A stretch of 64,000 bases of DNA from Macrostomum lignano (Eukaryota). Positions within the stretch are counted from its first letter, which is position 1. The number at the start of each line of letters is the position of its first letter. The notes under the pieces are model-generated. The model worked only from the letters and a program-made list of their open reading frames with translations. It was not told the origin of the DNA and made no database searches. Both the position numbers and the translations under genes were made by a program. The stretch lies in the NCBI GenBank assembly GCA_002269645.1, contig NIVC01003576.1, forward strand, positions 26,212 through 90,211, read 5' to 3'. Shown here in pieces: positions 6,732 through 53,861 of this stretch.

Positions 6732-6856
6732 AATAGAGAACCTAAAAAACGAAAGAAAATGGAATAATGCACCGACTGTCTACTAAAAGTAGTGCGACTA
6801 TTATAGACAAAAATGAGAAAACTTGCTCTCGATGTTCTACTGTAATTCTATTGTCA

Positions 6857-8344: not shown

Positions 8345-9563
<1,219 letters not shown>

Positions 9564-9565
9564 GA

Positions 9566-11106
<1,541 letters not shown>

Positions 11107-26857: not shown

Positions 26858-29547
26858 ATGCCGAACAAGAACAAGTCGGCAGTGAATGCATCTAATAGTG
26901 GGCCGCCTCGGCCCGACAGCAATGACAATAAGAAACAGAAAACTAATAAAAAGCCAAAGAAAGATGATGCCAGCTCCATAGTTGGCCTGAAGCAGCGCCT
27001 GAGCAGCATCCGCAACAAGCAGCGCAGGCAGGCCGCCTACCAGCAGGTCCGACAGGCCGAGCGTAAGGCCAAGGAGGCCGCCGTGAAGCTTCGCCGACGA
27101 AATGGTGCCGACAACGGCGCTGCCGGCCCAGCCAAGGAGCCACACACGCTGGAATCGCTGCGCCTGCCGGATGCCACCATGACTGGCCCGGCTGGGGACG
27201 CTGAGGTCGATGCTGAGGAGGCAGCCGACGAGTTTGCCGACATTCTTGACGCTGCTGGCGCTGGAGGCGAAGGTTGGCTACCGGATAATTGCGGCTTATT
27301 CTTTCGCGTTGCTGTTTTTACCTAGGGGTGCCATTTTTACCTAAAGGTGCCATCTTTACCTAGGGGTGCCATTTTTACCTAAGGGTTGCCATTTTTACTT
27401 GGGGTGCCATCTTTACCTAGGGGTGCCATTTTTACCTAAGGGTTGCCATTTTTACTTGGGGTGCCATCTTTACCTAGGGGTGCCATTTTTACCTAAGGGT
27501 TGCCATTTTTACTTGGGGTGCCATCTTTACCTAGGGGTGCCATTTTTACTTAGGGTGCCATTTTTACCTAGGATTGCCATTTTTCCTAGGGGTGCCATTT
27601 TTACCTAGGGGTGCCAGTTTTACCTAGAGGTGCCATTTTTACCTAGGGGTGCCATATTTACCTAGGGGTGCCATTTTTCCTAGGGGTGCCATTTTTATCT
27701 GTGAATGCCATTTTTACCTAGAGGTGCCATTTTACCTAGAGGTGCAATTTTTACCTAGAAGTGCCATTTTTACTAAGGGTGCCATTAAGGGTTGCCATTT
27801 TTACCCAGAGGTGCCATTTTACCTTGGGAGGGGTGCCATTTTGTCACATTGGTACTGCCTTACGCATGGGTTTCCATATTTTTACCCAAGAAGCCATTTT
27901 TCTGCAATCGGTCAAATCTCAAAAAAATTCGATTTCCCCACCCCCAGGCCAAGCCCGCCTGCCCCGCCTGCTGGTCACTCACGCCGACGAGGTCGGCCGA
28001 CGCACAGCCGCCTTCTGCCGTTGCCTGGCGCGCACCGTCCCCAACGCCGTGTTCTGCCGGCGTCGCCGACTGCCTCTCGGTCGGGTGCTCGCCGCCGCCA
28101 AGGCCAAGGAGTTCACCGCTGTGATGGTGCGCGATAATTTATCTACACGTTTTTGAAATTTAGCAGCCTGTCTTTATTAAGCTACTGTTAGTAGAGCGAA
28201 TTGCATTTTTTTATCTTGTATTTGTGATAACACAGAGCTTGCATATTTATGCCTTTAGTGTTCAAAGTTACCATGGACTCATTTCGATAATTGATGCTTT
28301 ATTTAAATCATTAATTTTTAATCTTCAATGGGTTGTAGCCTAGTGATTGGAGCGTCGGATACACGACTGAAAGGTCGGGGGTTCGATTCTCGACCCACTC
28401 GAAACAATTTGTGTCCTTGAGCAAGACGCTTAACTCTGCATTGCTTCAGTTCACCCAGCTGTAAAATGGGTGCCAGCATTAGCTGGGGTAAATTGAGGGT
28501 GTGTGTGGCGACCCTCCCAGTCCTTGGACTGAACAGCCGTACGCAGCCTTCAGATGCGCCGCGCAATAGCTGCGGCTGAGCTGTCGGTTGCACATCTGGC
28601 CATTAGGGCAGGTGTAATCAATTATTAATATTCTTTAAATGCACTTCTTGAATTCGGAATCAATTGCAGCTCGAAAAATCTTACGCTTAATTCAGTGTTG
28701 AAAGTTAATTAATTTCGATACATATCGGCAGTCGATCTTTTTAACGCCTTCTTAAAGACAGACAAATCAGAAAAATCTCCAGTGTTTAAATGTACTTTTC
28801 GATACATATCGTTAAATCATTTTTCAATCTAATCTTGATTTAATATATCGCAGATTTAATAAAAATCCCCATTCCGAAAAAAGTTCTTTTCGATACATGT
28901 CGGTAATCGATCCTACCTAGGTTAGCAATGCCTCAGATCAGAAAAATCCCTGATTCTATTTGATGTACTCCCAAAGTCTTAATCGTAGGTCGGAAATCAT
29001 CCTGTGTTTAAATTTAATTTCGATACATATCGGTAACTTTGGTCTAACGCAGATAATTGGCGAGCACGACAAGAAGCCGTGCACCGCCCTGCTAACCCAC
29101 CTACCGGCTGGGCCCACCTTCGCCTTCCGCCTGTCGAGCGTCCGGCTGCCCCGCGAGCTGCCCCGACCGCCCGAGGACGACAAGCCGGAGACCGTGGCGC
29201 CGCAGGTGCTCTGCAATCGATTCCACACCCGTCTGGGCCGTCGGGTCGCCCGCGGCCTGGCCGCCATCTTCCCAGGCGCCAGCGGTGTGCGCCGGCACGC
29301 CCGTGTGGTGACTTTTCACAATCAGCGCGACTACGTGTTCTTCCGGCACCATCGCTACATCCTGCGCCAGCCTGGGTCCGGCGCCAAACCAGGCGCCAAG
29401 CCGCGCTGCGCTCTGCAAGAGGTCGGGCCCAGGTTCACCCTGAAGCTGCGCTCGCTGCAAACCGGACCGCTTGGCGCCGGCGGCGGCTACGAGTGGCTGC
29501 ACAAACGGCACGAGATGGACCAGAGTAGGAGGCGCTTCTTTCTCTGA
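26858..29547 (+). CDS. RPF1: Ribosome production factor 1 (Brix domain), 362 aa
   Basis: Exons 26858-27272, 27948-28126 and 29053-29547 (phase 1 then phase 0, GT..AG). Motifs: LTHLPAGPTFAFRLSSVRL, NRFHTRLGRRVARGLAAIFP, VVTFHNQRDYVFFRHHRY, LQEVGPRFTLKLRSLQ and YEWLHKRHEMDQSRRRFFL*. The basic N-terminal PHTLESLR segment fits RPF1 rather than IMP4. Confidence 0.93.
27313..27843. repeat. ~19-bp minisatellite (TAGGGGTGCCATTTTTACC)n in RPF1 intron 1, with a 57-bp higher-order trimer
   Basis: About 27 copies. Monomers of 19+20+18 bp repeat as a 57-bp unit over ~27361-27530. Confidence 0.95.
28329..28620 (+). mobile_element. tRNA-derived SINE (copy 1) in RPF1 intron 2
   Basis: Pol III A box (TAGCCTAGTGATTGG) and B box (GGTTCGATTC). 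The central domain GTGTCCTTGAGCAAGACGCTTAACTC...CACCCAGCTGTAAAATGGGTGCC resembles conserved CORE/Meta-type SINE domains. A second copy lies at 35716-35931. Confidence 0.85.
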
Positions 29548-31525: not shown

Positions 31526-34500
31526 ACATGTAATCAGTATGGTGTGCTAGTGTTTTACATGTAATCAGTATGGTGTGCTAGTGTTCTACATGTAATCAGT
31601 ATGGTGTGCTAGTGTTCTACATGTAATCAGTATGGTGTGCTAGTGTTTTACATGTAATCAGTATGGTGTGCTAGTGTTCTACATGTAATCAGTAATGGTG
31701 TGCTAGTGTTCTACATGTAATCAGTATGGTGTGCTAGTGTTCTACATGTAATCAGTATGGTGTGCTAGTGTTCTACATGTAATCAGTATGGTGTACTAGT
31801 GTTCTACATGTAATCAGTATGGTGTGCTAGTGTTCTACATGTAATCAGTATGGTGTGCTAGTGTTCTACATGTAATCAGTATGGTGTGCTAGTGTTCTAC
31901 ATGTAATCAGTATGGTGTGCTAGTGTTCTACATGTAATCAGTATGGTGTGCTAGTGTTCTACATGTAATCAGTATGGTGTGCTAGTGTTCTACATGTAAT
32001 CAGTATGGTGTGCTAGTGTTCTACATGTAATCAGTATGGTGTGCTAGTGTTCTACATGTAATCAGTATGGTGTGCTAGTGTTCTACATGTAATCAGTATG
32101 GTGTGCTAGTGTTCTACATGTAATCAGTATGGTGTGCTAGTGTTCTACATGTAATCAGTATGGTGTGCTAGTGTTCTACATGTAATCAGTATGGTGTGCT
32201 ATGTGCTAATGTTCTACATGTAATCAGTATGGTGTGCTAGTGTTCTACATGTAATCAGTATGGTGTGCTAGTGTTCTACATGTAATCAGTATGGTGTGCT
32301 AGTGTTTTACATGTAATCAGTATGGTGTGCTAGTGTTCTACATGTAATCAGTAATGGTGTGCTAGTGTTCTACATGCAATCAGTATGGTGTGCTAGTGTT
32401 CTACATGTAATCAGTATGGTGTGCTAGTGTTCTACATGCAATCAGTATGGTGTGCTAGTGTTCTACATGTAATCAGTATGGTGTGCTAGTGTTCTACATG
32501 TAATCAGTATGGTGTGCTAGTGTTCTACATGTAATCAGTATGGTGTGCTAGTGTTCTACATGTAATCAGTATGGTGTGCTAGTGTTCTACATGTAATCAG
32601 TATGGTGTGCTAGTGTTCTACATGTAATCAGTATGGTGTGCTAGTGTTCTACATGTAATCAGTATGGTGTGCTAGTGTTCTACATGTAATCAGTATGGTG
32701 TGCTAGTGTTCTACATGTAATCAGTATGGTGTGCTAGTGTTCTACATGTAATCAGTATGGTGTGCTAGTGTTCTACATGTAATCAGTATGGTGTGCTAGT
32801 GTTCTACATGTAATCAGTATGGTGTGCTAGTGTTCTACATGCAATCAGTATGGTGTGCTAGTGTTCTACATGTAATCAGTATGGTGTGCTAGTGTTCTAC
32901 ATGCAATCAGTATGGTGTGCTAGTGTTCTACATGTAATCAGTATGGTGTGCTAGTGTTCTACATGTAATCAGTATGGTGTGCTAGTGTTCTACATGTAAT
33001 CAGTATGGTGTGCTAGTGTTCTACATGTAATCAGTATGGTGTGCTAGTGTTCTACATGTAATCAGTATGGTGTGCTAGTGTTCTACATGTAATCAGTATG
33101 GTGTGCTAGTGTTCTACATGTAATCAGTATGGTGTACTAGTGTTCTACATGTAATCAGTATGGTGTGCTAGTGTTCTACATGTAATCAGTATGGTGTGCT
33201 AGTGTTCTACATGTAATCAGTATGGTGTGCTAGTGTTCTACATGTAATCAGTATGGTGTGCTAGTGTTCTACATGTAATCAGTATGGTGTGCTATGTGCT
33301 AATGTTCTACATGTAATCAGTATGGTGTGCTAGTGTTCTACATGTAATCAGTATGGTGTGCTAGTGTTCTACATGTAATCAGTATGGTGTGCTAGTGTTT
33401 TACATGTAATCAGTATGGTGTGCTAGTGTTCTACATGTAATCAGTAATGGTGTGCTAGTGTTCTACATGCAATCAGTATGGTGTGCTAGTATTCTACATG
33501 TAATCAGTATGGTGTGCTAGTGTTCTACATGTAATCAGTATGGTGTGCTAGTGTTCTACATGTAATCAGTATGGTGTGCTAGTGTTCTACATGTAATCAG
33601 TATGGTGTGCTAGTGTTCTACATGTAATCAGTATGGTGTGCTAGTGTTCTACATGTAATCAGTATGGTGTGCTAGTGTTCTACATGTAATCAGTATGGTG
33701 TGCTAGTGTTCTACATGCAATCAGTATGGTGTGCTAGTATTCTACATGTAATCAGTATGGTGTGCTAGTGTTCTACATGTAATCAGTATGGTGTGCTAGT
33801 GTTCTACATGTAATCAGTATGGTGTACTAGTGTTCTACATGTAATCAGTATGGTGTGCTAGTGTTCTACATGTAATCAGTATGGTGTACTAGTGTTCTAC
33901 ATGTAATCAGTATGGTGTGCTAGTGTTCTACATGTAATCAGTATGGTGTGCTAGTGTTCTACATGTAATCAGTATGGTGTGCTAGTGTTCTACATGTAAT
34001 CAGTATGGTGTGCTAGTGTTCTACATGTAATCAGTATGGTGTGCTAGTGTTCTACATGTAATCAGTATGGTGTGCTAGTGTTCTACATGTAATCAGTATG
34101 GTGTGCTAGTGTTCTACATGTAATCAGTATGGTGTGCTAGTGTTCTACATGCAATCAGTATGGTGTGCTAGTGTTCTACATGTAATCAGTATGGTGTGCT
34201 AGTGTTCTACATGTAATCAGTATGGTGTGCTAGTGTTCTACATGTAATCAGTATGGTGTGCTAGTGTTCTACATGTAATCAGTATGGTGTGCTAATGTTC
34301 TACATGTAATCAGTATGGTGTGCTAGTGTTCTACATGTAATCAGTAATGGTGTGCTAGTGTTCTACATGTAATCAGTATGGTGTGCTAGTGTTCTACATG
34401 TAATCAGTATGGTGTGCTAGTGTTCTACATGTAATCAGTATGGTGTACTAGTGTTCTACATGTAATCAGTATGGTGTGCTAGTGTTCTACATGTAATCAG

Positions 34501-35708
34501 TATGGTGTGCTAGTGTTCTACATGTAATCAGTATGGTGTGCTAGTGTTCTACATGTAATCAGTATGGTGTGCTAGTGTTCTACATGTAATCAGTATGGTG
34601 TGCTAGTGTTCTACATGTAATCAGTATGGTGTGCTAGTGTTCTACATGTAATCAGTATGGTGTGCTAGTGTTCTACATGTAATCAGTATGGTGTGCTAGT
34701 GTTCTACATGTAATCAGTATGGTGTGCTAGTGTTCTACATGTAATCAGTATGGTGTGCTAGTGTTCTACATGTAATCAGTATGGTGTGCTAGTGTTCTAC
34801 ATGTAATCAGTATGTAATCAGTATGGTGTTCTACATGTAATCAGTATGGTGTGCTAGTATTCTACATGTAATCAGTATGGTGTGCTAGTGTTCTACATGT
34901 AATCAGTATGGTGTGCTAGTGTTCTACATGTAATCAGTATGGTGTGCTAGTGTTCTACATGTAATCAGTATGGTGTGCTAGTGTTCTACATGTAATCAGT
35001 ATGGTGTGCTAGTATTCTACATGTAATCAGTATGGTGTGCTAGTGTTCTACATGTAATCAGTATGGTGTGCTAGTGTTCTACATGTAATCAGTATGGTGT
35101 GCTAGTGTTCTACATGTAATCAGTATGGTGTGCTAGTGTTCTACATGTAATCAGTATGGTGTGCTAGTGTTCTACATGTAATCAGTATGGTGTGCTAGTG
35201 TTCTAGATGCAATCAGTATGGTGTGCTAGTGTTCTACATGTAATCAGTATGGTGTGCTAGTATTCTACATGTAATCAGTATGGTGTGCTAGTGTTCTACA
35301 TGTAATCAGTATGGTGTGCTAGTGTTCTACATGTAATCAGTATGGTGTGCTAGTGTTCTAGATGCAATCAGTATGGTGTGCTAGTATTCTACATGTAATC
35401 AGTATGGTGTGCTATGTGCTAATGTTCTACATGTAATCAGTATGGTGTGCTAGTGTTCTACATGTAATCAGTATGGTGTGCTAGTGTTCTACATGTAATC
35501 AGTATGGTGTGCTAGTGTTCTACATGTAATCAGTATGGTGTGCTAGTGTTCTACATGTAATCAGTATGGTGTGCTAGTGTTCTACATGTAATCAGTATGG
35601 TGTGCTAGTGTTCTACATGTAATCAGTATGGTGTGCTAGTGTTCTACATGTAATCAGTATGGTGTGCTAGTGTTCTACATGTAATCAGTATGGTGTGCTA
35701 GTGTTCTA
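31526..35708. repeat. 31-bp satellite (ACATGTAATCAGTATGGTGTGCTAGTGTTCT)n
   Basis: About 135 highly homogeneous copies over 4.2 kb. Confidence 0.99.
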
Positions 35709-35715
35709 GCACACC

Positions 35716-35931
35716 AATGGGCACAGCTACCTCAATGGGCAGATGTGCAACCGACAGCTCAGCCGCAGCTATTGTGTGGCCCATCTAAAGGCTGCGTACG
35801 GCTGTTCAGTCCGAAGACTGCAGAGTTAATTGTCTTGCTCAAGGACACAAATTGTTCCGAGTTGGTCGGGAATCGAACCCTCGACCTTTCAGTCGTGAAT
35901 CCGACGCTCTAACCACTGGGCTACGGCCCCC
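35716..35931 (-). mobile_element. tRNA-derived SINE (copy 2, central deletion)
   Basis: The reverse complement begins GGGGGCCGTAGCCCAGTGGTTAGAGCGTCGGATTCACGACTGAAAGGTCGAGGGTTCGATTCCCGACC and is colinear with copy 1, except that ~80 bp of the central domain is missing. Confidence 0.85.
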
Positions 35932-35944
35932 TAGTTATGATAAC

Positions 35945-36094: not shown

Positions 36095-36188
36095 TTCTTT
36101 TATTATTGACTTACTTTGACTTACTTGACTTAGCTGCAGGAGGCTCCGTGCGTCCGGAAACAGCGAGGAGGCGTTTCCGCCCATTTCG

Positions 36189-39100
36189 CTAGCCCCTGGC
36201 GACCACGGGCAGCTGGTGCTGCGGTGTTGCGCAGGGAGTTCCGGTGGCGCCGGTGTCCGCAGCGCGGTCCCCCTCCGGAGAGTTCAGGAGGTGGATTGTC
36301 GCTCGCCCGGTAGCCCTTAGATAGCGGACGAGCTGGCCGAGATTCTCGGGCCTGAAAACGTCGGAGAGGTCCGGGTTTGGGCCGAGGTAGGTGAGCCTGT
36401 CCTGAGTAAAGGCGGGGCATTCACAGATGAAGTGCTCCGCATTCTCGACACCGGAGAGGCAGAATGGGCATTCCTCACTGTGGATTTTCCCCTGGAGGTG
36501 ACGATGCCTGGCAAAGCAGCCATGACCCGAGAGGGCCATGGTCACCGTCCTGATGTCCCTGCGGTTGAGTCCAAACAGGGCCCGGCAGTCGGGGGCGTTA
36601 GCCCACCTCTCCCTGTGCTTAGAAGCCACCCACTGGTTGATCCGAGTGGTGACAACGGCGATGGGGGTGGGGGCCACGGGCAGGGGACCAGTGAAAGAAC
36701 CGGTCGAGCCAGCCTTGGCCAGGCGATCGGACAACTCGTTGCCGGGGTGGCCCGAATGCCCGGGGATCCACCTTAGGGACACCTTGTTAGAGGTGCCTAA
36801 GCGGTTGAGCTGCCCGATACAGTCGAGGACTGTACGCGAGCAGGTGGTGGCGCGCTCAAGGGCGTGAATCGCCGCTTGACTGTCTGAGTGGAGGGTAATC
36901 TCCTTCAGCTCCATGGCGCAGGAGCTGATGGCGAGAATCGAAGACGGTGGAGTAGGTGCCGGTGTGTTGGGAGAAGGTCACCACAGTTCTCCCTCCAGAC
37001 ACGATGCAGTAGCCGACAAGTGCGACACGCGCAATAGCACGACAAGCGCGGCCTTGCACCCTATTTAGTGCCTCAAGAACCCCTTTCACCTCTAGGGCAC
37101 TATTCCAAACTATTCCAAATGAAGCCGGCGAAGGAGATGGCCGGTCTAACAATGACAGTGTAAATCCACCAGAGGCGGACACCCAACCAATCACCCATGA
37201 AAGCATCCAACCCCCGTCGGCGGGGGGTGAGGCCCCAGGTAGCACCGAAAGCTCTGCGGATCTGCGCGAGAGTCGCGAGAGCTTTGCGGGCTTTGGTTTG
37301 GCCGTGCGGGGTCCAACTCAACCTGTGGTCGAGAGTGACGCCCAGACATCTGGTTTGTTTCTCTATGGCAACGGGTTTGCCATAGAGGGAGAGCGGTTCG
37401 ATCCTCCAGTTTCGGCGGCTGGTGAACATGATAGCCACGGTTTTAGACTCAGAGAACCTGAGACCGCAGGTATGTGCCCAGCGCTCGGCACGGTGGATGA
37501 AGGCTTGAAGGAGGTCCCTGAGGACCGCGGGTGATGGTCCAGCCACAGTGGCGGTAACATCGTCCGCATAGCCGACCTTCTGAACTGGGTCCGGATTCGG
37601 GCTGCAAAGCAGCTCGTCCATGACTAAATTCCAGAGGATCGGGCTGAGGACTCCACCTTGCGGTCGCCTTTCTGGACTTCCACGGAGCGTGAGTGTCCCA
37701 GGAGGTGCGAGGTGGCAGTACGATGGGAGACCATGTACATGATCCAGCGAGTGAGGTGCTCGTGCGTGCCCCAGGATTCCAGGGCCCGCTTAAAGGCTTC
37801 AAAGAGTACATTGTTGAAAGCACCATCAATGTCGAGGAAAAGCGATAGCGCGTATCCACTGCCAAGCACGGCGCGCTCCAGCTTGTCGACAATGGCGTGC
37901 AGCGCACTTTCGATGGAGCGTCCAGGACGAAAGGCGTGCTGATTAGGGGAGAGCGGGGAGTTCCTCAGCTCTACGAGAAGGCGCCAAAGCACCAGCCGTT
38001 CCATCAGTTTGGATCTGTCCGCCCGGAGAGTGGTCCGGTGGGCCTAGCTGCTGCGCGGCACGTGGGAAAGAGCTGGTGAGCATGATGTCCAGCGATTCCC
38101 CGGGGTTCTCAGCGAGCCGGCCGTCCGGTGTTTTAATAACTGAGAGCTTTGACATTTTGTCGAAGGTGAGAGCCTTAACCACGCGTGAGGTAGGGCGGGT
38201 GCCTTCTAACTCCGCGCAGTATTGGCGCCACTTGTCGGGTTTGGCTTTCCTGGTTTCACGCTTAAGGTCGCGGATCGCTTCTTGATAGGCGGCCAGGTCA
38301 GCTGGGTCCTTGCTCTTGCGAGCTTTCCGTTGGAGGCACTTTGCCTTGCGCCGGAGGGATCCAAGCGCCGGGTGCCACCAAGGGGCGGATTTTTTGCCTT
38401 TGTAGGCTTTGAGAGGACAGGAAGCCTCATGGGCTGTCAGGACGGTCTTGCTGAGCAATTCTGCAAGGTCATCCACTTCCTGACAGGTGGTTCGAGCGGC
38501 GGTAGACAGCTGATCTGTCTGGCATTTCAGGGTTTCCGTGAAAGCCGTCCAGTCAGTGTTCCGGACGTTCCCTTTCCACAGAATGTGAGGCTTGCGGCAA
38601 GAGGATTGCAATCGAAAGTGAAAGAAGCGATGGTCAGACAGAGACTCCTCTTCGTCCCAAACCTCCCAGTCCTTGACTAAAGGAGTCAAGCCATGGGATT
38701 CGAGGGTAACGTCGAGGGCCTCCGTCCATCGCCCGTTGTCGAAGGTCGGGTTCCACCAATGTTGCAATCCTCAGTGTTGGTGGTGCAGATGTAAGCAAGG
38801 AGTTCCTCGCCTCTGTTATTGGAAGAATTACTGCCCCAGTGGGTGTGACGAGCGTTGACGTCGCCCGCCACCAGCAGTTCGAACCTACGGTCAGAGCAGT
38901 AGTCCACGAGGGAGGTGAGGTTGGGTGGAACCGCGGGGCCGTCGCCAGGGATATAAATCGAGGCGATTATGACCGTGCGGTTGGTGATAATGTGGTTGGA
39001 CTGAATGACACAGAGGTCTCTGTCAGAGAGGTCCGGTCTGTGCCAAGCTTTGAGATGGGTAGACACGAACATGGCTGCTCTGGGGTTTTGAGGGTCCTGA

Positions 39101-39629
39101 AAACAGTCAAAACCAGCAGGAATATTCAGAATCTTACCTTTCTTTGTCCAGGGCTCCTGGAGTAGGATAATGCCCGGTTTCACAAAGTTTGCCACCCGTA
39201 TGGGGAAGGTTGGTCGAGGCCGCGATGCAGTGGTGTGGTTAAGCTGCAGGATGTCCACTCCGGGGATTCCACGAGTGGTCCGCGCAGCTTCCTGCCGGCT
39301 CAAGGCGAGTTGTGCAGGAGAGCCACCTCTTCTGCCTCGCCGATGGCTCCAGGCTCCAGTTCCATGGGCTCCTCCCGGATGGTCTCCATCGTTGAGGGTG
39401 GGGCCACCACAAGGGCGGCATTCTCGCTCTCGGCCCGGTTTTCCGGGGGGGGGGGCGCAGTGGTGACACTGGGCTGGGGGTGGCTGCGGTTGGGGGCCTT
39501 GGCGGTGTCCAGCAGCTGCTTCGCGCGCTGAGTCAAACCAGAGCGGATAGTGTTCCGGGCGGGTTTCCGGCCCTTTCCACGTCCGCCTGTTGCTACAGCT
39601 TTCGCGGCTTTCCCTATGACAGGGTCCAC
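36189..39629 (-). pseudogene. LINE ORF2 (APE endonuclease, reverse transcriptase, RNase H, CCHC), broken
   Basis: Motifs are spread over at least six ORF fragments (38686-39858, 37943-38767, 37624-38004, 37100-37621, 36856-37245, 36189-36914). The RT N-terminal subdomains (PGPDG/RPISL region) and the first RNase H motif (TDGS) are absent. Probable start is MDPVIG at 39629. Confidence 0.85.
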
Positions 39630-39703
39630 GTCCTCGGAGGGGTCGTGACGGCCGGGAGCTTCTTTTCCTGCGTTTCCGCCCGGCAGAGCCCCCGCTCGCT
39701 CGC

Positions 39704-40772
39704 TTACGCTTCTCCGGGGGCGGTGGGCGGGTCAGACTCGAAGCTAAAGAGCTGAATCTGCAGACAGAGATCGAAGCTAAAGAGCTGAATCTGCACCAGC
39801 CCGACAGAGATGAGGGACATGTCCGGGTAGCGGAGCATCCAGCTATCCGACAGTCCAAGAATAGCCCTGAAACCGTCTCCGCCCGGCTTGGAGATGGTCT
39901 CGTGAACTACGACACTGTTTGCCGGTAGCTCCGGGTTGGAAGCCATTAGCAGGTGACGCAGCTCGTCGGCCTTGGTGATGCAGCTGCGAGCCGGAATCCA
40001 GGCACGGTGCCGGTGTGTCCGGGGTCGCTCGTCCTCCCTGTAGATGAACAGGTTCTCCAGCTCCGTGCCCCAGTCGAAGATTTTCAGCAGCTCGAGGAGC
40101 TGCTGTCCTGACTGGCTGTCGGCGGGCTGGATATGAAGGGCTTGGTCCTCGACTTTCGTCTTTTGGACTGGAATAGCGGTAGCGCTCAAGGCCATCTTGA
40201 CCAGGTGGGAGTCCAACCTGCGCCAGATAAGGTCGAGCTGTTCGGCCGTAAGAGGCGTCTCCTGGCCTTGGATAACCAGGGCCGGCTGCATCTTGGCCAT
40301 AGCCGCGTTCGGCTTGGTGGTTTGGCCAGCGCCCCCCGCTTTGGATCCCTCCGCGGCCGTGGGAGTTTCCACACGGGCAGAGGTCCCGCCACGGGAGGGG
40401 CCAGCCGCACCAGGAGCTTTGGCGGCACCTGATGCATCTGACCGGCGCGCGGGGTCCACCCCCTTGTCGGATGTCGGCTTCTCCGCGGGGTTCGCAGAGT
40501 TACCGGCACCCTCCTCGGAGGTGGGCGGAGGGGCGGCTTTCGCATTCCTCCGTTCCTCCGCTTTTCGCTGGAGAAATGCTACGGGCCTTCTTTTTCGAAA
40601 TCTGAGGTCCGCTGTCTTGTCCAGCCACTCCGGTATTATCCTGAGCGGCGGCAGCGGCAGACTGAGAGGCACCGGAGGTTCCGGTGTTGCGAATGTCCGG
40701 CTGGGCCGCGGTGCCAACCTCGGTTGGTGCTCCAGCAGCCTCGGACGTGTTGGATGTAAATGAATACTCCAT
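39704..40772 (-). pseudogene. LINE ORF1 with a DUF4780-like domain (typical of LOA-clade ORF1)
   Basis: Low-complexity A/P/G N-terminus, then LTAEQLDLIW...RAWIP...LLMASNPEL...AILGLS...ISVGLVQI, recognised by eye as DUF4780-like. Frameshift near the start (ATG 40772 vs ORF 39704-40717); in-frame 33-bp duplication near the C-terminus (39738-39795). Confidence 0.7.
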
Positions 40773-41179
40773 GAGTCGCTGAAAGGCGAGTGGGGACTAG
40801 AGGTGAGAAGCCGCTGGGCCGTAACCCCAAACCCAACAGCCAGGCCAAGAGGTAGCGACCGGGGTGGCTTAAGCCCGTACCGGCCCGACCGCTAGCAACC
40901 GAGAAACTCCCCGGCTAAGAGCCCGGCTTGGAGAAACCAGAGGCCGAACCAAAGGCCGAACCAAAGTACCATCAGCACGGTACTACACTGGGCCCTTGAG
41001 GGAAGCAGGAGGACTGCCTCTGGAGCCTGCGGACTGGCCGCATACCCTGTTAAGGTCAGAGGGTGGTACCTGTTCCTCAGAGCCGTGGCCAGAGGTACCT
41101 GATACGCACAGGTTCACTTCCGGGCGGAGCCCGTACTTAAATTGGCCAATAGGCCACGGATGGGTTGCCGCCGCCGGAG

Positions 41180-41384
41180 CCCAGTCAGTCCAGCAGCCCT
41201 AGAGCTGTCTTGAACACATGCCGGGCGTGAACCCCTGGGTCGGCTTGCGAGTCAGCTTGGAGAGAGTTCTCCTGCCATTCCTGCACCAGAATAGAGGGGG
41301 TGCACGTGTGTAGGATCGCAGACCTTAGCTCGTAGGCCTGGTCTGTCTCATGCTACACAGGCGTGCTGACCCCGCCTTGCATGC
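41180..41384 (-). ncRNA. HDV-like self-cleaving ribozyme at the 5' end of the LINE
   Basis: Hand fold of the minus strand: P1 GCATGC (41384-41379)/GCATGT (41221-41216) with a G1-U wobble; P2 CCCAG/CTGGG; P3 GGG/CCC; L3 TTCACG(C); GT after P1; P4 TCAAGACAGC/GCTGCTGGA; J4/2 CTGA (catalytic C = 41188). G1 is the base abutting the TSD. Confidence 0.75.
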
Positions 41385-41426
41385 TTCTTTTAGTATTTAT
41401 AGTATTAGTACTTTTAGTATTAATAT

Positions 41427-41669
41427 TTGAGTGCCTGCGGCGTTAAAATGAGTGCCTGCGGCGCTAAAATGAGTGCCTGCGGCGCTAGAATGAGTGCCTG
41501 CGGCGCTAAAATGAGTGCCTGTGACGCTAAAATGAGTGCCTGCGGCGTTAAAATGAGTGCCTGTGGCGCTAAAATGAGTGCCTGCGGCGCTAAAATAAGT
41601 GCCTGCGGTGCTTAAAAGAGTGCCTGCGGCGCTAAAATGAGTCTCTGCGGCGCTAAAATGAGTGCCAGC
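41427..41669. repeat. 21-bp minisatellite (TGAGTGCCTGCGGCGCTAAAA)n
   Basis: About 11 copies just outside the LINE 5' TSD. Confidence 0.95.
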
Positions 41670-43336: not shown

Positions 43337-46147
<2,811 letters not shown>

Positions 46148-47577: not shown

Positions 47578-49195
47578 GACCGTTTTGGCGCCTCTTCAAT
47601 CCCAGTTTTGGCGCTTTTTCAGTCCCAGTTTTGGCGCTTTTTCAGTCCCAGTTTTGGCGCTTTTTCAATCCCAGTTTTGGCGCTTTTTCAATCCCAGTTT
47701 TGGCGCTTTTTCAGTCCCAGTTTTGGCGCTTTTTCAATCCCAGTTTTGGCGCTTTTTCAATCCCAGTTTTGGCGCTTTTTCAATCCCAGTTTTGACAACC
47801 CGTCAATTCCAGTTTTGGCGCTTTTTCAGTCCCAGTTTTGGCGCTTTTTCAATCCCAGTTTTGGCGCCTTTTCAATCCCAGGTTTTGCGCTTTTTCAATC
47901 CCAGTTTTGGCGCTTTTTCAATCTTAGTTTTGGCGCTTTTTCAATCCCAGTTTTGGCGCCTTTTCAATCCCAGTTTTGGCGCTTTTTCAACCCTAGTTTT
48001 GGCGCTTTTTCAATCCCAGTTTTGGCGCTTTTTGAGTCCCAGTTTTGGCGCTTTTTCAATCCCAGTTTTGGTGCCTTTTCAATCCCAGTTTTGGCGCTTT
48101 TTCAATCCCAGTTTTGGCGCTTTTTCAATCCCAGTTTTGGCGCTTTTTCAATCTTAGTTTTGGCGCTTTTTCAATCCCAGTTTTGGCGCCTTTTCAATCC
48201 CAGTTTTGGCGCTTTTTCAACCCTAGTTTTGGCGCTTTTTCAATCCCAGTTCTGGCGCTTTTTCAATCCCAGTTTTGGCGCTTTTTCAGTCCTAGTTTTG
48301 ACAACCCGTCTATCCCAGTTTTGGCGCTTTTTCATTCCTAGTTTTGACAACCCGTCAATTCCAGTTTCGGCGTCTCTTCAATCCCAGTTTTGGCGCTTTT
48401 TCGATCCCAGTTTTGGCGCTTTTTCAATCCCAGTTTTGGCGCTTTTTCAGTCCCAGTTTTGGCGCTTTTTCAATCCCAGTTTTGGCGCTTTTTCAATCCC
48501 AGTTTTGGCGCTTTTTCAATCCCAGTTTTGGCGCTTTTTCAATCCCAGTTTTGGCGCTTTTTCAATCTTAGTTTTGGCGCTTTTTCAATCCCAGTTTTGG
48601 CGCTTTTTCAATCCCAGTTTTGGCGCTTTTTCAATCCCAGTTTTGGCGCTTTTTCAATCCCAGTTTTGGCGCTTTTTCAACCCTAGTTTTGGCGCTTTTT
48701 CAATCCCAGTTTTGGCGCTTTTTCAATCCCAGTTTTGGCGCTTTTTCAATCCCAGTTTTGGCGCTTTTTCAACCCTAGTTTTGGCGCTTTTTCAATCCCA
48801 GTTTTGGCGCTTTTTCAATCTTAGTTTTGGCGCTTTTTCAATCCCAGTTTTGGCGCTTTTTCAATCTTAGTTTTGGCGCTTTTTCAATCCCAGTTTTGGC
48901 GCTTTTTCAATCCCAGTTTTGGCGCTTTTTCAATCCCAGTTTTGGCGCTTTTTCAACCCTAGTTTTGGCGCTTTTTCAATCCCAGTTTTGGCGCTTTTTC
49001 AATCCCAGTTTTGGCGCTTTTTCAATCTTAGTTTTGGCGCTTTTTCAATCCCAGTTTTGGCGCTTTTTCAATCCCAGTTTTGGCGCTTTTTCAACCCTAG
49101 TTTTGGCGCTTTTTCAATCCCAGTTTTGGCGCTTTTTCAATCCCAGTTTTGGCGCTTTTTCAATCCCAGTTTTGGCGCTTTTTTAATCCCAGTTT
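47578..49195. repeat. 23-bp satellite (CAATCCCAGTTTTGGCGCTTTTT)n
   Basis: About 70 copies, ending ~1.2 kb upstream of the Slo1 start codon. Confidence 0.98.
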
Positions 49196-50375
49196 TTACG
49201 TCTTCCAGCAACAGTTTCGGACCACAGTTTCAAAACCCTTTTAATAAAGCCTCAAGATAATTCAGTCAGATCAACAGACCTTTTCTGCTGTTCGCACGGA
49301 ACTGGGAGTTGCTTGGGGATTTCTTTACCAGAAAATCACTTCACGCTGGGGCCGCGCTGTTTGTTAGAATGGAGACCAGATGGTTAAAATTGGATAAGGA
49401 GTGAAACTATAAGAGGAGAAAAGACGAGAGCTGACCCAGAAACAGGGGGCAAGTAACGAGGAGAATTATCCTTTGCTAAGAAACATTTGGCCAACCCAGA
49501 AGAAAAAATGCCTGTCCCGGCTGCTTATTCATTTCGGACTGCGAACATCTCCATTCTCCCCCCTGCCCGCAAAGTCCCCCCCCTCGGGCAGACTGCTGCC
49601 CCCCATCCCGAGGCCCCAAGAGCTTTGATAGCTTCGAAAGCTTGGCCTCCCTAAAACACGCTGACAAGGGGGAGGCGAGAGAGAGGGAGAGACTACAGCA
49701 GCTGTACGAGTAATGGCTGCTGTAAGGGAGAGGCAGACCAGAGGGCGTGGTGGGGCTTCAAATGGACTGCCTGCAGCAGCAGCAGCAGCAGCAGCAGTGA
49801 GGAGGGTAGCTTAGCATTTTTGTGCCGTGCGCCCACCAAAAGTGCAGACGGATCGCTGATTACCAATACTGCCTGGCTGCCTGACTGACTGCTTGAGGAA
49901 GGGACAGTGAAGAACAGCGGGCGCATTGTTCGGCTTTTTCGGTCTTCACAACTGCACTGGACAGTCCAGAGCCCCGCTCGCGAACTGCAGCGGCCAATGG
50001 GAGAGGGGCGAAGGCTAGAGGGTAGCGGAGAGGCTGCTGGGGACGATGCGGCACTAAGAGCATCGGTGGACAGAGTTGCGCTTCTTGTTGCAGTACACAC
50101 CAACGGGCGGGGGATAAGATACAGTACCGGAGAGTCGGGCAATTTACGCCCAAAGTGGATTTTAGTTTCCACTGCTGCAGTGGCTGTCCATAGGCCAGCG
50201 TCTGACAGCTCGCATTCATAGCCTTCGAGCAGCGCTCTCGCGGCTTGTCAACCTCGCCAAGTGGGCCGTCTGTTCCTGCTGGTTCAGCGCTACCGACAGC
50301 GCGCACGATCGGCCCTCAGCCGTCGATGCTGAGTAGCTGGTGGCGGCAGCGGCAGATCGGCAAAACCATTGCGCC

Positions 50376-53300
50376 ATGGCCACTGCCACCACGGCCGCTT
50401 CTGCTTCAACGAAGCTGCTCACGACTGCGGCTGCGGCAACGACGACAGCTGCGACAGCCGCGGCAGCCGCCAACGGAACTCGCTCGTCGCTGGCGGGCCC
50501 GCTGGCCTGCACCGGCCAGCGCAAGTGGTACATCTTCCTGGCCAGCAGCGGCATCGTGCTCCTCGGCGGCGTCCTGTTCGTCCTCATCTACCGCCTGCTG
50601 TCGCACCTGGCCGGCAAGATCGGGGCCGGCAGGGCCGGCGCCGCCGGCAAGCAGCCGGAGAACAAGGAGAAAACGGATGACAGCGGAGACGAGGATGAGG
50701 CCGACGAGTCAACCGAAGAGGAAGTCGAAGTCGGCTGGCTGACGGAGGCCAAGGACTGGGCGGGCGAGTTGATCTCCGGCCAGACCACCACAGGCCGCAT
50801 CCTGGTGGTGCTGGTGTTCCTGATCAGCATCGCCTCCCTCATGGTGTACATCATCGACACGGCCAGCATGAAGCAGACCGAGGAGTGCATCCGCTGGTCG
50901 GACAGCCTGTCCCAGCAAATCGATCTCGCCTTCAATGTCATCTTCCTGATCTACTTCTTCATCCGGTTCATCGCCGCCCAGGACAAGCTGCTGTTCTGGT
51001 TCGAGATGTACAGCCTGGTGGACATCCTGACCATACCGCCGTCGTTTGTCTCAATCTACCTGAACCGCAACTGGATCGGGCTGCGCTCGACTCGAGCTCT
51101 GCGCATCCTCAGCCTGCCGGACGTGCTGCAGTACCTGAACATTCTGAAGACCAGCACGAGCATCCGGCTGTTCCAGCTCATGACATTCTTCGCCTCCCTG
51201 GTGCTCACCGCGGCCGGCTTCGTGCACCTGATTGAGAACTCGGGCGACCCGCCGTCATTCACCAATCCGAACATCAGCTTCAACATGACCTATCCGACCT
51301 GCATCTATTTTGTTATCGTGACCATGTCGACTGTGGGCTACGGCGACATCTATTGCACCACGAGCACCGGCCGGCTGTTCTCCGCCCTGGTGATCATGGG
51401 CGGTCTGGCCGTGTTCGCCAACTCCATCCCGGAGATCGCAGACATCCTCAGCTCGCGCAACAAGTACGGCGGCTACTACCGCAAGGAGGCCGGCAAGCAG
51501 CACATCGTGCTGTGCGGCCACATCACCTACGAGTCCGTGGCCAACTTCCTCGGCGACTTCCTGCACGAGGACCGCGAAGATGTTGACGTCCAGATTGTGA
51601 TTCTGGACAAGCACGTGCCCGACCTGGAGCTGCAGGGCCTGTTCAAGCGTCACTTCACCCAGGTGGAGTTCTTCCAGGGCTCCGTGATGAACTCCAAGGA
51701 CCTGTCCCGGGTGGGCCTGGAGACGGCGGACGCTTGCCTGGTGCTGGCCAACAAGTACTGCCCCGACCCGGATGCTGAGGATGCGGCCAACATCATGCGC
51801 GTGATCTCCATCAAGAACTTCTATGAGCGGATCAAGGTGATCATCCAGCTGATGCAGTACCACAACAAGACCTACCTGCTGAACATCCCCAGCTGGGACT
51901 GGAAGCAGGGCGACGATGCCGTCTGCATCGCCGAGCTGAAGCTGGGCTTCCTGGCGCAGAGCTGCCTGGCGTTCGGCTTCTCCACCCTGCTGGCCAACCT
52001 GTTCACCATGCGCAGCTACAAGGACGACAAGGCCATGCCTAAATGGCTCAACAACTACCTGGAGGGCGCCGGCATGGAGATGTACACCGAGTACCTGTCG
52101 CCGGCGTTCGAAGGCCTGACGTTTCCCATGGCGGCTGAGCTGTGCTTCACCAGGCTGAACCTGCTGCTCATTGCTGTAGAGGCCAAGAACGACCAGGGCA
52201 CGGAGAGCTGCATCGCCATCAACCCCAAGGAGAACATCCGCATCGAGCAGGGCACGCAGGGCTTCTTCATCGCCCAAGCGGCCGAGGAGGTCAAGAAGGC
52301 GTTTTTCTTCTGCAAACGCTGCCACGGCGACGTCGAAGACTCGCGTCTGATAAAGAAGTGCCGCTGCAAAACTTCTGTGGCGATAACGGCCAAGTCAAAG
52401 TCGCAATCAAAGCAAAAGCAACTGCAACAACAGCAGCAGAAAAAGCAGCAGCATCAGCAGCAGGCAGCAAATCCCAGGAGCAGAAATCACCCGGGCCAGG
52501 GCCAGAACTCGCTACCGGTTGCTACGGGCGGCTTGGGCGACGGAGGCGGCGCGAGTCCTGGCCGGCACCTGCAGCTGCCGGGATCGGCTCCGGAGCCGGG
52601 GGACATCAGCCACAGCAGCCGGCACGGCAAGCTCTCTGTGGCGCACACCAACCCGATCTCGCTGCAGAAGCTGCACGATCAGATGGACCGCAAGTTCGAC
52701 TCCACTGGAATGTTCCACTGGTGTCCAGATGTGAACTTCGAGGACGCGATTCTGGACCGCGAGCAGGTCACGGCGACGGTGTACTCTAACCACATCGTCG
52801 TCTGCCTGTTCGCCGACGCTGGCAGCCCGTTGATCGGCCTGCGCAACTTCGTGATGCCGCTTCGGGCGAGCAACTTTCATTATCACGATCTCAAGCACGT
52901 GATCTTCGTAGGCAACGCCGACTACATGCGGCGCGAGTGGAAGACGCTGATGAATTTTCCCAAGCTGAGCATCTTCCCCGGCTCCCCGCTCAACCGGTCC
53001 AACCTGCGCGCGGTCAACATCAACCTGGCCGAGATCTGCGTGGTGCTGAGCTCGAAGCAGGCTTCGAATCTGGACGACCCGACTCTGGCCGACAAGGAGG
53101 CCATTCTGTGCTCGCTGAACATCAAGGCGATGAAGTTCGACACCGAGGCTCCACCGACTCAGCAGGTCGCCACCACGCCACCGAGCTCTAATAACAACGT
53201 CCGAATCCTGACGGAGCTCTCCATGGACGATAACGTCCAGTTCCTCGAGCAGGACGACGACGATGACCCCGACATTGAGCTGTACATGACGCAGCCGTTC

Positions 53301-53861
53301 GCCTGCGGCACCTCGTTTGCCATCAGCGTGCTCGACTCCCTCATGAGCACGGCCTATTTCAACGAGAATGCGCTGACGCTAATCCGGACGCTCATCACGG
53401 GCGGAGCAACGCCCGAGCTTGAGCAGATCCTGGCCGAGGGCGCCGGCATTCGCGGCGGCTTCAGCACGCCGGAGTCGTTGGCAAATCGGGACAGATCGCG
53501 AGTCTCCCAGCTGGCGGTTGACGACGAACGACTTCGAGAATTTGTCACCGGAGCCGGGGCGGTGTACTCCGACCTGTTTCTGGGCGCTCTGCACCGGTAC
53601 GGCATCCTCTGCATCGGCCTGTACCGGCTGCTCACCCCGCCGGAAGAGGGCAAGCAGACGCTCAAGAAGCGCTACATCATCACGAATCCGCCGGCCAAAT
53701 TCCCGGTGCTGATGTCGGATAGGGTGGTCTGCCTGCAGCGGTTCACCAACCAGCACGAGGGCCGGCACAGCCACGGCAGCGGCGCAGCAAGCGGCGGCCC
53801 CGGTGGCTCCTCAATTGGCCGGCCGCCTCCGGGAGGCCTGCAGCATCAGAGATCCGCGTGA
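50376..53861 (+). CDS. KCNMA1: Slo1/BK large-conductance Ca2+-activated K+ channel alpha subunit, single exon, 1161 aa
   Basis: First ATG (GCCATGG) at 50376 follows an in-frame TAG. Present in one uninterrupted ORF: S0 ([11 protein letters not shown]), [22 protein letters not shown]4 (GLR..RALR), pore (TMSTVGYGD), RCK1 ([12 protein letters not shown]; [16 protein letters not shown]), CKRCH heme motif, RCK2 and the calcium bowl ([24 protein letters not shown]). Confidence 0.97.

What the first reader, a model, noticed from the sequence alone, without database searches (positions are those of the whole stretch)
41180..41384. HDV-like ribozyme precisely at the 5' terminus of a LOA-type LINE
Seen: on the minus strand, the first base inside the 8-bp TSD starts a complete HDV-type double pseudoknot. 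P1 is GCATGC/GCATGT with a G1-U wobble and an A-G mismatch at position 7; P2 is CCCAG/CTGGG, extendable by GCCG/CGGC. P3 is GGG/CCC, the L3 core TTCACG matches that of the mammalian CPEB3 ribozyme, and GT follows P1 (CPEB3-like one-pair P1.1). An irregular P4 is followed by J4/2 CTGA, fitting C-N-R-A. A ~130-nt J1/2 insert folds into its own multi-helix domain (GCGGGGTCAGC/GCTGACTCGC enclosing TGTGTAG/CTACACA, CAGACC/GGTCTG, TGCACC/GGTGCA, GGAG/CTCC). The TSD and the fold were located independently and agree to the nucleotide. Established: HDV-like ribozymes process the 5' ends of R2, R4, RTE, L1Tc and LOA-clade (Baggins) elements. Inference: this element is transcribed from upstream host promoters and liberates its own 5' end; a CPEB3-like variant with a large J1/2 domain in a putative flatworm LOA element may be undescribed. 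Caveat: as written, the L3/P3 junction is one C short of the canonical 7-nt L3 plus 3-bp P3, which could be a homopolymer error or a mutation in this decayed copy.
Basis: partly seen in the sequence, partly recalled or inferred. Interest (0 to 1): 0.82.

Follow-up and report, generated by a model that had tools for sequence, protein, structure and literature searches.

The report
Self-cleaving ribozyme heading a flatworm LINE
The first 205 bases of a dead jumping gene (a LINE retrotransposon, probably from a Macrostomum flatworm) fold into the known HDV-like self-cutting RNA shape that such elements use to trim their own 5' end; this is a credible new example of a known trick, not a new kind of thing.

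Summary
On the minus strand, G41384 is the first base after an exact 8-bp target-site duplication (TAAAAGAA). It begins a sequence that threads onto the HDV-like nested double pseudoknot exactly as described: P1, P2, P3, L3, P4 and J4/2 CUGA with C41188.

A loose descriptor finds about 20 such folds per window by chance, so the fold alone proves nothing. Three other points carry the case:
- The fold starts at the TSD-defined terminus. This happened in about 1 of 1000 shuffles.
- An intact relative (L001, 70-80% nt identity) has a contig that begins at the homologous G.
- L001 keeps all 18 core pairs, with compensatory changes in P1 (A-U to C-G) and P2 (C-G to U-A). It also keeps the same multi-arm J1/2 domain.

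The element (41384-36103) is a frameshifted APE-RT-RNase H LINE missing about 291 nt of RT. Its closest proteins are from Macrostomum lignano. LOA-clade membership could not be tested.

Large J1/2 domains are already known in R2 and drz-Agam-2 ribozymes. The "missing C" looks like two substitutions at the L3/P3' junction, so this copy may be impaired.

Verdict: new member of a known kind. Catalysis is untested.

The parts
41385..41392 (-). 5' copy of the target-site duplication TAAAAGAA, immediately upstream of G1
41180..41384 (-). Whole HDV-like ribozyme candidate (205 nt), from G1 to the end of the P2 3' strand
41379..41384 (-). P1 5' strand GCAUGC. The predicted cleavage is 5' of G41384.
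   Evidence: Pair 3 is A-U here and C-G in L001.
41245..41376 (-). Structured J1/2 peripheral domain: a closing stem, then a sub-junction carrying arms A and B, plus arm C. Arm A holds the most conserved block (AUGAGA..GACCAGGCC..GCUAAGGUCU.CGAU).
   Evidence: Independent MFE folds of the window and L001 give the same architecture.
41241..41244 (-). P2 extension, 5' strand GCCG (pairs with 41173-41176)
41235..41239 (-). P2 5' strand CCCAG
   Evidence: Pair 2 is C-G here and U-A in L001.
41232..41234 (-). P3 5' strand GGG
41226..41231 (-). L3 UUCACG (6 nt). U1 and G6 have the same spacing as in L001 (UCUCCGU) and in CPEB3 (UUCACGU).
41222..41225 (-). P3 3' strand CCC (41225-41223) plus the extra G41222. 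In the alternative register, C41225 is the seventh L3 base and G41222 makes a G.G mismatch in P3.
41216..41221 (-). P1 3' strand GCAUGU
41214..41215 (-). J1/4 GU. The G is the candidate for a one-pair P1.1 with an L3 cytosine.
   Evidence: for the sequence. The P1.1 pairing is inference.
41189..41213 (-). P4: 9 bp with one A.G mismatch and one bulged A, closing a 4-nt loop
   Evidence: L001 has an unrelated 11-bp hairpin at the same place.
41185..41188 (-). J4/2 CUGA. C41188 is the putative catalytic cytosine.
41180..41184 (-). P2 3' strand CUGGG
41173..41176 (-). P2 extension, 3' strand CGGC
39707..40891 (-). ORF1 remnant (open for 395 codons; no Pfam hit), homologous to L001 ORF1
36192..39250 (-). 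ORF2 remnant: endonuclease (APE), reverse transcriptase and RNase H. It is broken by several frameshifts and by a deletion of about 291 nt in the RT, at 38011-38016.
36103..36133 (-). 3' tail of short AAGTC/AAGTAAGTC-type repeats ending in AATAA
   Evidence: L001 ends with CTAAGTCAAAGT.
36095..36102 (-). 3' copy of the target-site duplication TAAAAGAA

Best explanation
The window holds one full-length but dead copy (41384-36103, minus strand) of a two-ORF APE-RT-RNase H non-LTR retrotransposon from a Macrostomum-like flatworm. The first ~205 nt of its RNA form an HDV-like self-cleaving ribozyme with these parts:
- a 6-bp P1 that starts at the element's first base;
- a ~139-nt structured J1/2 peripheral domain;
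- a 5-bp P2 with a 4-bp extension;
- a GGG/CCC P3;
- a CPEB3-like L3;
- an irregular P4;
- J4/2 CUGA, whose C41188 acts as the general acid.

In active family members, the element is transcribed as part of a longer RNA, or from any upstream start. The ribozyme then cuts just 5' of G1. This yields an RNA that begins exactly at the element boundary with a 5'-OH, and that RNA is the template for target-primed reverse transcription. The folded J1/2 domain probably holds P1 and P2 together (the 'pinch' effect).

What is shown: the sequence anatomy, the coincidence with the terminus, and conservation with compensatory changes in one relative. What is inferred: cleavage itself, co-transcription, and the role of the J1/2 domain.

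This particular copy carries an atypical L3/P3' junction and is no longer under selection. I put its own activity at about 0.4 to 0.5.
For: 1. All helices are present at the stated coordinates.
2. G1 is the first base after an exact 8-bp TSD. The TSD has p about 0.003.
3. A descriptor hit starting at base 1 occurred in 1 of 1000 dinucleotide shuffles. The per-position rate in GC-rich LINE DNA is 3.5e-4.
4. L001 is an intact relative with ORF1 and ORF2 open and 67-80% nt identity. Its contig starts at the homologous G.
5. L001 satisfies the same topology.
6. All 18 core pairs (P1, P2, P2 extension, P3) are kept in both sequences. Two changes are compensatory on both sides, two are one-sided G-C/G.U changes, and none is broken. 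Slid registers pair only 32-39% of cells.
7. P4 differs entirely in sequence but is a hairpin at the same place in both.
8. The J1/2 domains fold independently into the same architecture, and 10 of 31 alifold pairs are compensatory.
9. The double-pseudoknot fold is about as stable as the best nested fold: -84 against -85 kcal/mol for the window, and -136 against -133 for L001.
10. The literature reports HDV-like ribozymes at the 5' ends of R2, R4, Dong, baggins and L1Tc elements and in RTE elements. It also reports large J1/2 domains.
Against: - No Rfam HDV-like model matches, at gathering score or at E <= 10.
- Only two sequences are available, so the shuffle statistic is uninformative (129/500).
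- Neither sequence fits the full canonical descriptor. The window has a 6-nt L3, or a 7-nt L3 with a G.G mismatch in P3. L001 has J4/2 CUGC rather than C-N-R-A, a G-C rather than G.U first pair, and a 6-nt J1/4.
- The loose descriptor is common by chance: 22 starts per window. In shuffles of the GC-rich L001 5' end, a hit at position 1 occurred in 2.8%.
- Relatives at about 33% aa identity show tandem 5' monomers rather than a ribozyme.
- L001's start at G1 could be an assembly break rather than an RNA end.
- No cleavage data exist.
Confidence: 0.75

Rival explanations
1. The 5' 200-250 nt is a conserved, structured 5' UTR with another job: internal promoter, translation-initiation or IRES-like element, or binding site for ORF1p/ORF2p. 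It can be drawn as an HDV-like pseudoknot but does not cleave.
For: - The J1/2 domain is the most conserved and best-supported structure.
- No Rfam HDV-like hit was found.
- Each sequence misses one canonical feature.
- Descriptor hits are frequent in GC-rich sequence.
- Distant relatives use tandem 5' monomers, a promoter-like layout.
Against: - The long-range P1 and P2 pairings span 160-200 nt and cross each other. They are exactly those that define the ribozyme.
- Each shows a compensatory double change, and none of 18 pairs is broken.
- P1 uses the very first bases of the element.
- A C sits directly 3' of P4 in both sequences, and U...G in L3 keeps the CPEB3 spacing.
- The roles are not exclusive: L1Tc combines a promoter and a ribozyme in the same 77 nt.
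Confidence: 0.15
2. The family ribozyme is real, but the window copy is catalytically dead or badly impaired because of substitutions at the L3/P3' junction. It is a fossil only.
For: - The copy has multiple frameshifts and a ~291-nt RT deletion, so it has drifted neutrally.
- Against L001, the junction reads CGCCCGGCA rather than CGUCCCGCA. That gives either a 6-nt L3 plus a bulged G, or a G.G mismatch in P3.
- Single L3 or P1 changes abolish activity in some R2 ribozymes.
Against: - An R2 ribozyme with a P3 mismatch and odd L3 spacing is listed among natural R2 ribozymes as deviating substantially from most HDV-like ribozymes.
- The window keeps G.U at the cleavage site, C-N-R-A, and all P1 and P2 pairs.
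- L001 can also adopt the 6-nt-L3 register through a G.U pair.
Confidence: 0.5
3. Pure chance: a hand-threaded fold in GC-rich sequence with no biological meaning.
For: 22 descriptor hits per window. The overall MFE z-score of the 215-nt region is only -1.0.
Against: - The fold coincides with the terminus (1 of 1000 shuffles).
- The TSD agrees.
- All pairs are conserved with compensatory changes in a 70-80% identical relative that starts at the same base.
Confidence: 0.03

Closest known systems
HDV-like ribozymes at the 5' ends of non-LTR retrotransposons (baggins of Drosophila, R4, Dong, L1Tc; also reported in RTE elements; Ruminski et al. 2011 and Sanchez-Luque et al. 2011, as summarised in PMC3774820 and PMC6765202)
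   Same: [quoted passage not shown] The presumed job is the same: to free the element RNA from a longer co-transcript. The nested double-pseudoknot topology is the same, with a catalytic C directly 3' of P4.
   Different: The host phylum is different (a macrostomid flatworm). There is no sequence similarity detectable by Rfam models. Whether this element belongs to the same clade as baggins (LOA) was not testable. Activity is untested.
Mammalian CPEB3 ribozyme
   Same: The L3 sequence is UUCACG(U). GU follows P1, giving a one-pair P1.1 layout. P4 abuts the catalytic C.
   Different: CPEB3 is intronic, about 68 nt long, and has a short J1/2. Here L3 lacks the seventh base (or P3 has a mismatch), J1/2 is about 139 nt, and the context is a LINE 5' end. 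The resemblance is probably convergence on a small active site, as argued for R2 ribozymes.
drz-Agam-2-1 (Anopheles gambiae) and other large HDV-like ribozymes with a P1.2 peripheral domain (Webb et al. 2016, PMC4908430)
   Same: It has a structured domain inserted in J1/2 and an extended P2. Such domains accelerate cleavage by bringing P1 and P2 together.
   Different: From my own recollection of the published figure, the Agam-2 peripheral domain is essentially one helix. That detail is not in the text retrieved. Here it is a closing stem plus three arms (139-163 nt) with a near-invariant internal block.
R2 retrotransposon ribozymes (Eickbush lab, PMC3774820), including planarian R2
   Same: It is an HDV-like ribozyme encoded at the LINE 5' end. 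P1 is 6-7 bp, P2 is at least 5 bp, and P4 is variable. The P1-to-P1' distance ranges from 23 to more than 700 nt, so large J1/2 loops are ordinary. One flatworm (Schmidtea) R2 is included in that survey.
   Different: R2 is rDNA-specific, has a restriction-like endonuclease, and often cleaves upstream in the 28S sequence. This element has an APE endonuclease and RNase H, inserts in AT-rich DNA with an 8-bp TSD, and its P1 begins at the element's own first base.
Twister-variant ribozymes of Schistosoma mansoni non-LTR elements (PMC8501958)
   Same: It is a flatworm LINE that uses a self-cleaving ribozyme in retrotransposition.
   Different: It is a different ribozyme class (twister, not HDV-like) in a different flatworm lineage.

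Membership tests
HDV-like self-cleaving ribozyme | Nested double-pseudoknot order: P1 - J1/2 - P2 - P3 - L3 - P3' - P1' - J1/4 - P4 - J4/2 - P2' | tested here: met
   My own descriptor scan recovers 41384..41180 and L001 1..237.
HDV-like self-cleaving ribozyme | P1 of 6-7 bp that starts at the cleavage-site nucleotide, usually with G1.U | tested here: met
   The window has GCAUGC/GCAUGU with G.U. L001 has GCCUGC/GCAGGC with G-C.
HDV-like self-cleaving ribozyme | Three-bp GC-rich P3 closed by a 7-8-nt L3 that carries the conserved U and G (reverse wobble) and a C for P1.1 | tested here: inconclusive
   U and G are present at L3 positions 1 and 6, as in CPEB3. However, the window has only 6 nt in L3 with a 3-bp P3, or 7 nt with a G.G mismatch. 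L001 has a canonical 7-nt L3.
HDV-like self-cleaving ribozyme | Catalytic C opening J4/2, directly 3' of P4 (C-N-R-A in the search descriptor, which I recalled from memory) | tested here: met
   The window has CUGA with C41188 abutting P4. L001 has CUGC, so the C is present but the last A is not.
HDV-like self-cleaving ribozyme | Covariation supporting the crossing helices P1 and P2 | tested here: met
   There is one compensatory double change in each of P1 and P2, and 0 of 18 pairs is broken. Slid controls pair 32-39%. Only two sequences are available, so this is weak statistically.
HDV-like self-cleaving ribozyme | Recognition by curated Rfam models of HDV-like families (a detection criterion, not a defining feature) | tested here: not met
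   There is no hit at gathering score, at E <= 10 in 41000-41600, or at E <= 5 in L001. This is expected if a 139-nt insertion and the pseudoknots defeat the models, but formally the test is negative.
HDV-like self-cleaving ribozyme | Mg2+-dependent site-specific self-scission giving a 5'-OH and a 2',3'-cyclic phosphate | not testable with these tools
   This needs in vitro transcription and cleavage assays.
Non-LTR retrotransposon with a 5'-terminal processing ribozyme | The ribozyme cleavage site coincides with the element's 5' boundary | tested here: met
   G41384 directly follows the 8-bp TSD. The L001 contig begins at the homologous G.
Non-LTR retrotransposon with a 5'-terminal processing ribozyme | Many independent copies share the 5' end but have different upstream flanks | not testable with these tools
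   There is only one copy in the window. No Macrostomum genome DNA was reachable.
LOA clade of non-LTR retrotransposons | RT phylogeny groups the element with Loa, Bilbo, Baggins and Lian | not testable with these tools
   No named reference sequences were available. Hits below 40% identity are unnamed or are fungal or insect reverse transcriptases.
LOA clade of non-LTR retrotransposons | Two ORFs, with ORF2 ordered APE - RT - RNase H | tested here: met
   Pfam finds Exo_endo_phos_2, RVT_1 and RNase_H in that order. L001 gives the intact layout. From my own knowledge, the I, Tad1, R1 and ingi clades share this order, so it is not diagnostic.

The most novel reading that the evidence does not exclude
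The 139-163-nt J1/2 insert may be more than a passive 'pinch' helix. It could be a conserved four-helix module: a closing stem plus three arms, with a near-invariant AUGAGA...GACCAGGCC...GCUAAGGUCU.CGAU core. Such a module might couple ribozyme folding to something else, for example binding of the element's ORF1p or ORF2p, or cap-independent translation of ORF1. In that case 5' processing would be gated by assembly of the element's own RNP.
Probability: 0.15. Interest if true: 0.6.

Novelty: new member of a known kind. Interest (0 to 1): 0.4.

Why it matters
If cleavage is confirmed, 5'-end self-processing by HDV-like ribozymes extends to an APE/RNase H LINE family of a basal free-living flatworm that is a laboratory regeneration model. 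In flatworms, the papers I retrieved link ribozymes to non-LTR elements through a predicted planarian R2 ribozyme and twister variants in Schistosoma.

It would also give a natural, phylogenetically variable example of a large multi-arm J1/2 domain for studying how peripheral domains activate this ribozyme class.

For genome annotation, it offers a precise marker of full-length 5' ends for this family. It does not change the general picture, which has been established since 2009-2013.

Tried and rejected
- **Rfam.** I scanned the whole window at gathering score, 41000-41600 at E <= 10, and six loci at E <= 5. No HDV-like family matched. The weak miRNA and snoRNA matches are chance or reflect the 21-bp repeat.
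- **Second copy in the window.** Self-BLAST found none. It found only satellites and a SINE-like repeat.
- **More family copies.**
  - An ORF1 protein search returned only L001 itself and UniRef M. lignano models without DNA.
  - P0003's contig has no retrievable DNA and starts inside ORF1.
  - An exact look-up of a window ORF found nothing on record.
  - A metagenome scan for the conserved J1/2 core found 0 hits.
- **Distant relatives.** L002-L009 are at 30-37% aa identity. L002, L004, L008 and L009 lack a 5' UTR in the contig. L003, L005 and L006 gave no credible descriptor hit in the 5' region. The four L003 hits under the relaxed C-N-R-N setting start 440-540 nt inside the element and reach ORF1, so I treated them as chance. 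L003 and L007 have tandem 5' monomers instead.
- **Descriptor hit at 53334-53503.** I rejected it because it lies inside a BK-channel coding ORF.
- **Homopolymer error (CCC versus CCCC).** I considered this explanation less likely than substitutions, given the ungapped match to L001.
- **Literature.** The Ruminski 2011 and Webb 2009 papers are not held. I could not compare with the Baggins ribozyme sequence or quote the original descriptor, so the C-N-R-A rule is from memory.
- **Shuffle control.** With two sequences it is uninformative.

Full report
**What is in the sequence**

Read on the minus strand, the 8-mer TAAAAGAA (41392-41385) is followed by G41384. From there the sequence is GCATGCAAGGCGGGG...
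- P1: GCAUGC (41384-41379) pairs with GCAUGU (41221-41216). The closing pair is G1.U, and A41378 faces G41222.
- P2: CCCAG (41239-41235) pairs with CUGGG (41184-41180).
- P2 extension: GCCG pairs with CGGC across a small internal loop.
- P3: GGG pairs with CCC.
- L3: UUCACG.
- J1/4: GU follows P1.
- J4/2: CUGA (41188-41185).

A constrained fold resolves the "irregular P4" as a 9-bp hairpin (41213-41189) with one A.G mismatch and one bulged A. It ends directly before C41188.

A published mouse Cpeb3 ribozyme primer (GTTCACGTCGCGGCC, 18 nt from the cleavage site) confirms that the CPEB3 L3 is UUCACGU. The window matches its first six bases.

**The element**

The GC-rich block 36103-41384 (about 59% GC in an AT-rich, satellite-laden window) carries the following on the minus strand:
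- an ORF1 remnant;
- fragments with Pfam Exo_endo_phos_2, RVT_1 and RNase_H, in that order.

ORF2 is broken by several frameshifts. Compared with an intact relative, it lacks about 291 nt of the RT.

The 3' end is a short AAGTC/AAGTAAGTC-type repeat tail, followed by the second TAAAAGAA at 36102-36095. That 8-mer is the only shared 8-mer between the two junction regions. It would appear in a 40-nt stretch of shuffled 3' sequence with p about 0.003.

The copy is therefore a full-length but dead LINE whose first base is G41384. The closest proteins are Macrostomum lignano gene models (72% identity), which supports a macrostomid flatworm origin. There is no second copy in the window.

**Is the fold more than chance?**

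Taken alone, it is not. A loose HDV-like descriptor gives hundreds of hits. A strict descriptor requires:
- G at +1;
- a fully paired 6-7-bp P1;
- a P3 with at least two G-C pairs;
- an L3 of 6-8 nt;
- a G after P1;
- a P4 stem;
- J4/2 of C-N-R-A;
- a P2 of at least 5 bp.

This strict version still finds 22 distinct starts in the two strands of the window. One of them lies inside a BK-channel coding ORF.

What is unusual is where this hit starts. Chance starts occur at 3.5e-4 per position in GC-rich LINE DNA. Only 1 of 1000 dinucleotide shuffles of the element's first 260 nt gave a hit at base 1.

No Rfam family matches at any threshold. That is a real negative. It is also the expected outcome for a pseudoknotted motif split by a 139-nt insertion.

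**Comparative evidence**

Protein searches led to one retrievable close relative, L001. It is a 6.5-kb Logan contig with intact ORF1 and ORF2 and 67-80% nt identity to the window element.

The contig begins with GCCTGCAATGGCAGGG... Its first base aligns with G41384. The contig runs past the element's 3' end into unrelated sequence. The shared start is therefore either the family's DNA terminus or an RNA end.

L001 threads onto the same topology:
- P1: GCCUGC pairs with GCAGGC.
- P2: CUCAGA pairs with UCUGAG.
- P2 extension: the same GCCG/CGGC.
- P3: GGG pairs with CCC.
- L3: a canonical 7-nt UCUCCGU.
- P4: an 11-bp hairpin of unrelated sequence.
- A C sits 3' of P4.

In the alignment, all 18 core pairs are standard pairs in both sequences:
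- One compensatory double change lies in P1 (A-U to C-G).
- One compensatory double change lies in P2 (C-G to U-A).
- Two changes are one-sided (G.U to G-C in P1; G-C to G.U in P3).
- No pair is broken.
- Sliding the partners by 1-3 columns drops pairing to 32-39%.

With two sequences the shuffle control cannot reach significance (129/500). My rough estimate is that six helix substitutions all preserving pairing has a probability of about 0.002. This is my inference, taking about 26% divergence.

The J1/2 inserts (139 nt in the window, 163 nt in L001) fold independently into the same architecture: a closing stem, a sub-junction with two arms, and a third arm. Alifold finds 10 compensatory pairs among 31. 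For example, arm B is UGCACC/GGUGCA in the window and UCCGCA/UGCGGA in L001.

I added the P2 duplex energy to the constrained nested fold. This puts the double pseudoknot level with or below the best nested fold: -84 against -85 kcal/mol for the window, and -136 against -133 for L001. These figures ignore pseudoknot entropy.

**The L3/P3' anomaly**

That is two substitutions and no indel.

The window can therefore form one of two arrangements:
- a 3-bp P3 with a 6-nt L3 and a bulged G41222;
- the canonical 7-nt L3 with a G.G mismatch in the outer P3 pair.

L001 can adopt both registers. The conserved L3 U and G keep the same spacing in the window, L001 and CPEB3.

L001 also departs from the search descriptor. 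Its J4/2 is CUGC, its first pair is G-C, and its J1/4 is 6 nt.

Natural R2 ribozymes show comparable departures: 1-2 mismatches at the top of P1, a mismatch in P3, and altered L3 spacing. Yet single changes in L3 or P1 can abolish activity. Because the window copy is a decayed pseudogene, I rate its own activity at roughly even odds.

**Mechanism**

- Shown: the anatomy, the coincidence with the terminus, and conservation with compensation.
- From the literature: HDV-like ribozymes are reported at the 5' ends of R2, R4, Dong, baggins and L1Tc elements and in RTE elements. They release the element RNA from co-transcripts, and some also promote translation. Structured J1/2 domains accelerate cleavage by bringing P1 and P2 together.
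- Inferred for this family: read-through or upstream-initiated transcripts are cut 5' of G1. This yields an RNA that starts at the element's first base, with C41188 acting as the general acid.
- Untested: whether host promoters drive transcription. The upstream DNA here is tandem repeats.

**Comparison and novelty**

Large J1/2 regions are not new. In R2 ribozymes, P1 and P1' are 23 to more than 700 nt apart. Large HDV-like ribozymes, drz-Agam-2-1 being the one studied, carry an activating J1/2 domain.

In flatworms, a planarian R2 ribozyme has been predicted. Schistosoma LINEs use twister variants. A full-text search for Macrostomum plus ribozyme found nothing relevant.

LOA membership could not be tested. 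The APE-RT-RNase H order is shared by several clades. Relatives at about 33% aa identity carry tandem 5' monomers instead of this fold.

My verdict is a credible new member of a known kind, of moderate interest. The multi-arm J1/2 domain, with its near-invariant core, is the most original detail.

Noticed in passing
window 50340-53861 (+): A single uninterrupted 1173-codon ORF encodes a complete BK/Slowpoke calcium-activated potassium channel (Pfam Slo-like_RCK 9e-72, Slowpoke_C, BK_channel_a, Ion_trans). It is an intronless gene or a retrogene in a satellite-rich region.
   Followed up: partly
window 31526-35708: A 31-bp satellite (ACATGTAATCAGTATGGTGTGCTAGTGTTCT) with about 134 copies at 97% identity lies about 390 bp beyond the LINE's 3' TSD.
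   Followed up: no
window ~35866-35935 (-), second copy 28335-28615: A tRNA-like head (GGGGCCGTAGCCCAGTGGTTAGAGCG...GGTTCGATTCCCGACC) is followed by a body that recurs at 28335-28615 with 89-91% identity. ARAGORN calls no tRNA. It looks like a tRNA-derived SINE just downstream of the LINE.
   Followed up: partly
window 41428-41666: A 21-bp tandem repeat (TGAGTGCCTGCGGCGCTAAAA, 11 copies) starts 36 bp upstream of the LINE's 5' TSD. It produced the spurious weak MIR9783 match.
   Followed up: no
window 1-64000 generally: The density of tandem repeats is very high. Examples are a 23-bp repeat at 2662-6401 and another at 6854-7900, (TATC)n at 8345-10769, a 10-bp CTCTCCCTGT repeat at 43406-46063, and a 23-bp repeat at 47582-49196. 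Several have extreme strand skew.
   Followed up: no
L003 150-540; L007 1-180: Relatives at about 33% ORF2 identity, from metagenome contigs, have 5' UTRs built of tandem monomers: repeats of roughly 110-125 nt in L003 and about 57 nt in L007. L003 gave no credible HDV-like descriptor hit (L007 was inspected by eye only). The 5' strategy therefore seems to differ within this group of elements.
   Followed up: partly
window 38011-38016 (-): About 291 nt of the RT domain present in L001 (3403-3693) has no counterpart in the window copy. This accounts for the missing N-terminal RT motifs.
   Followed up: partly
L001 5966-6492: Past the element's 3' end, the Logan contig continues into GC-rich sequence with ORFs called on the opposite strand. 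The contig therefore has a 3' flank but no 5' flank, and it stops exactly at the predicted ribozyme cleavage site.
   Followed up: no
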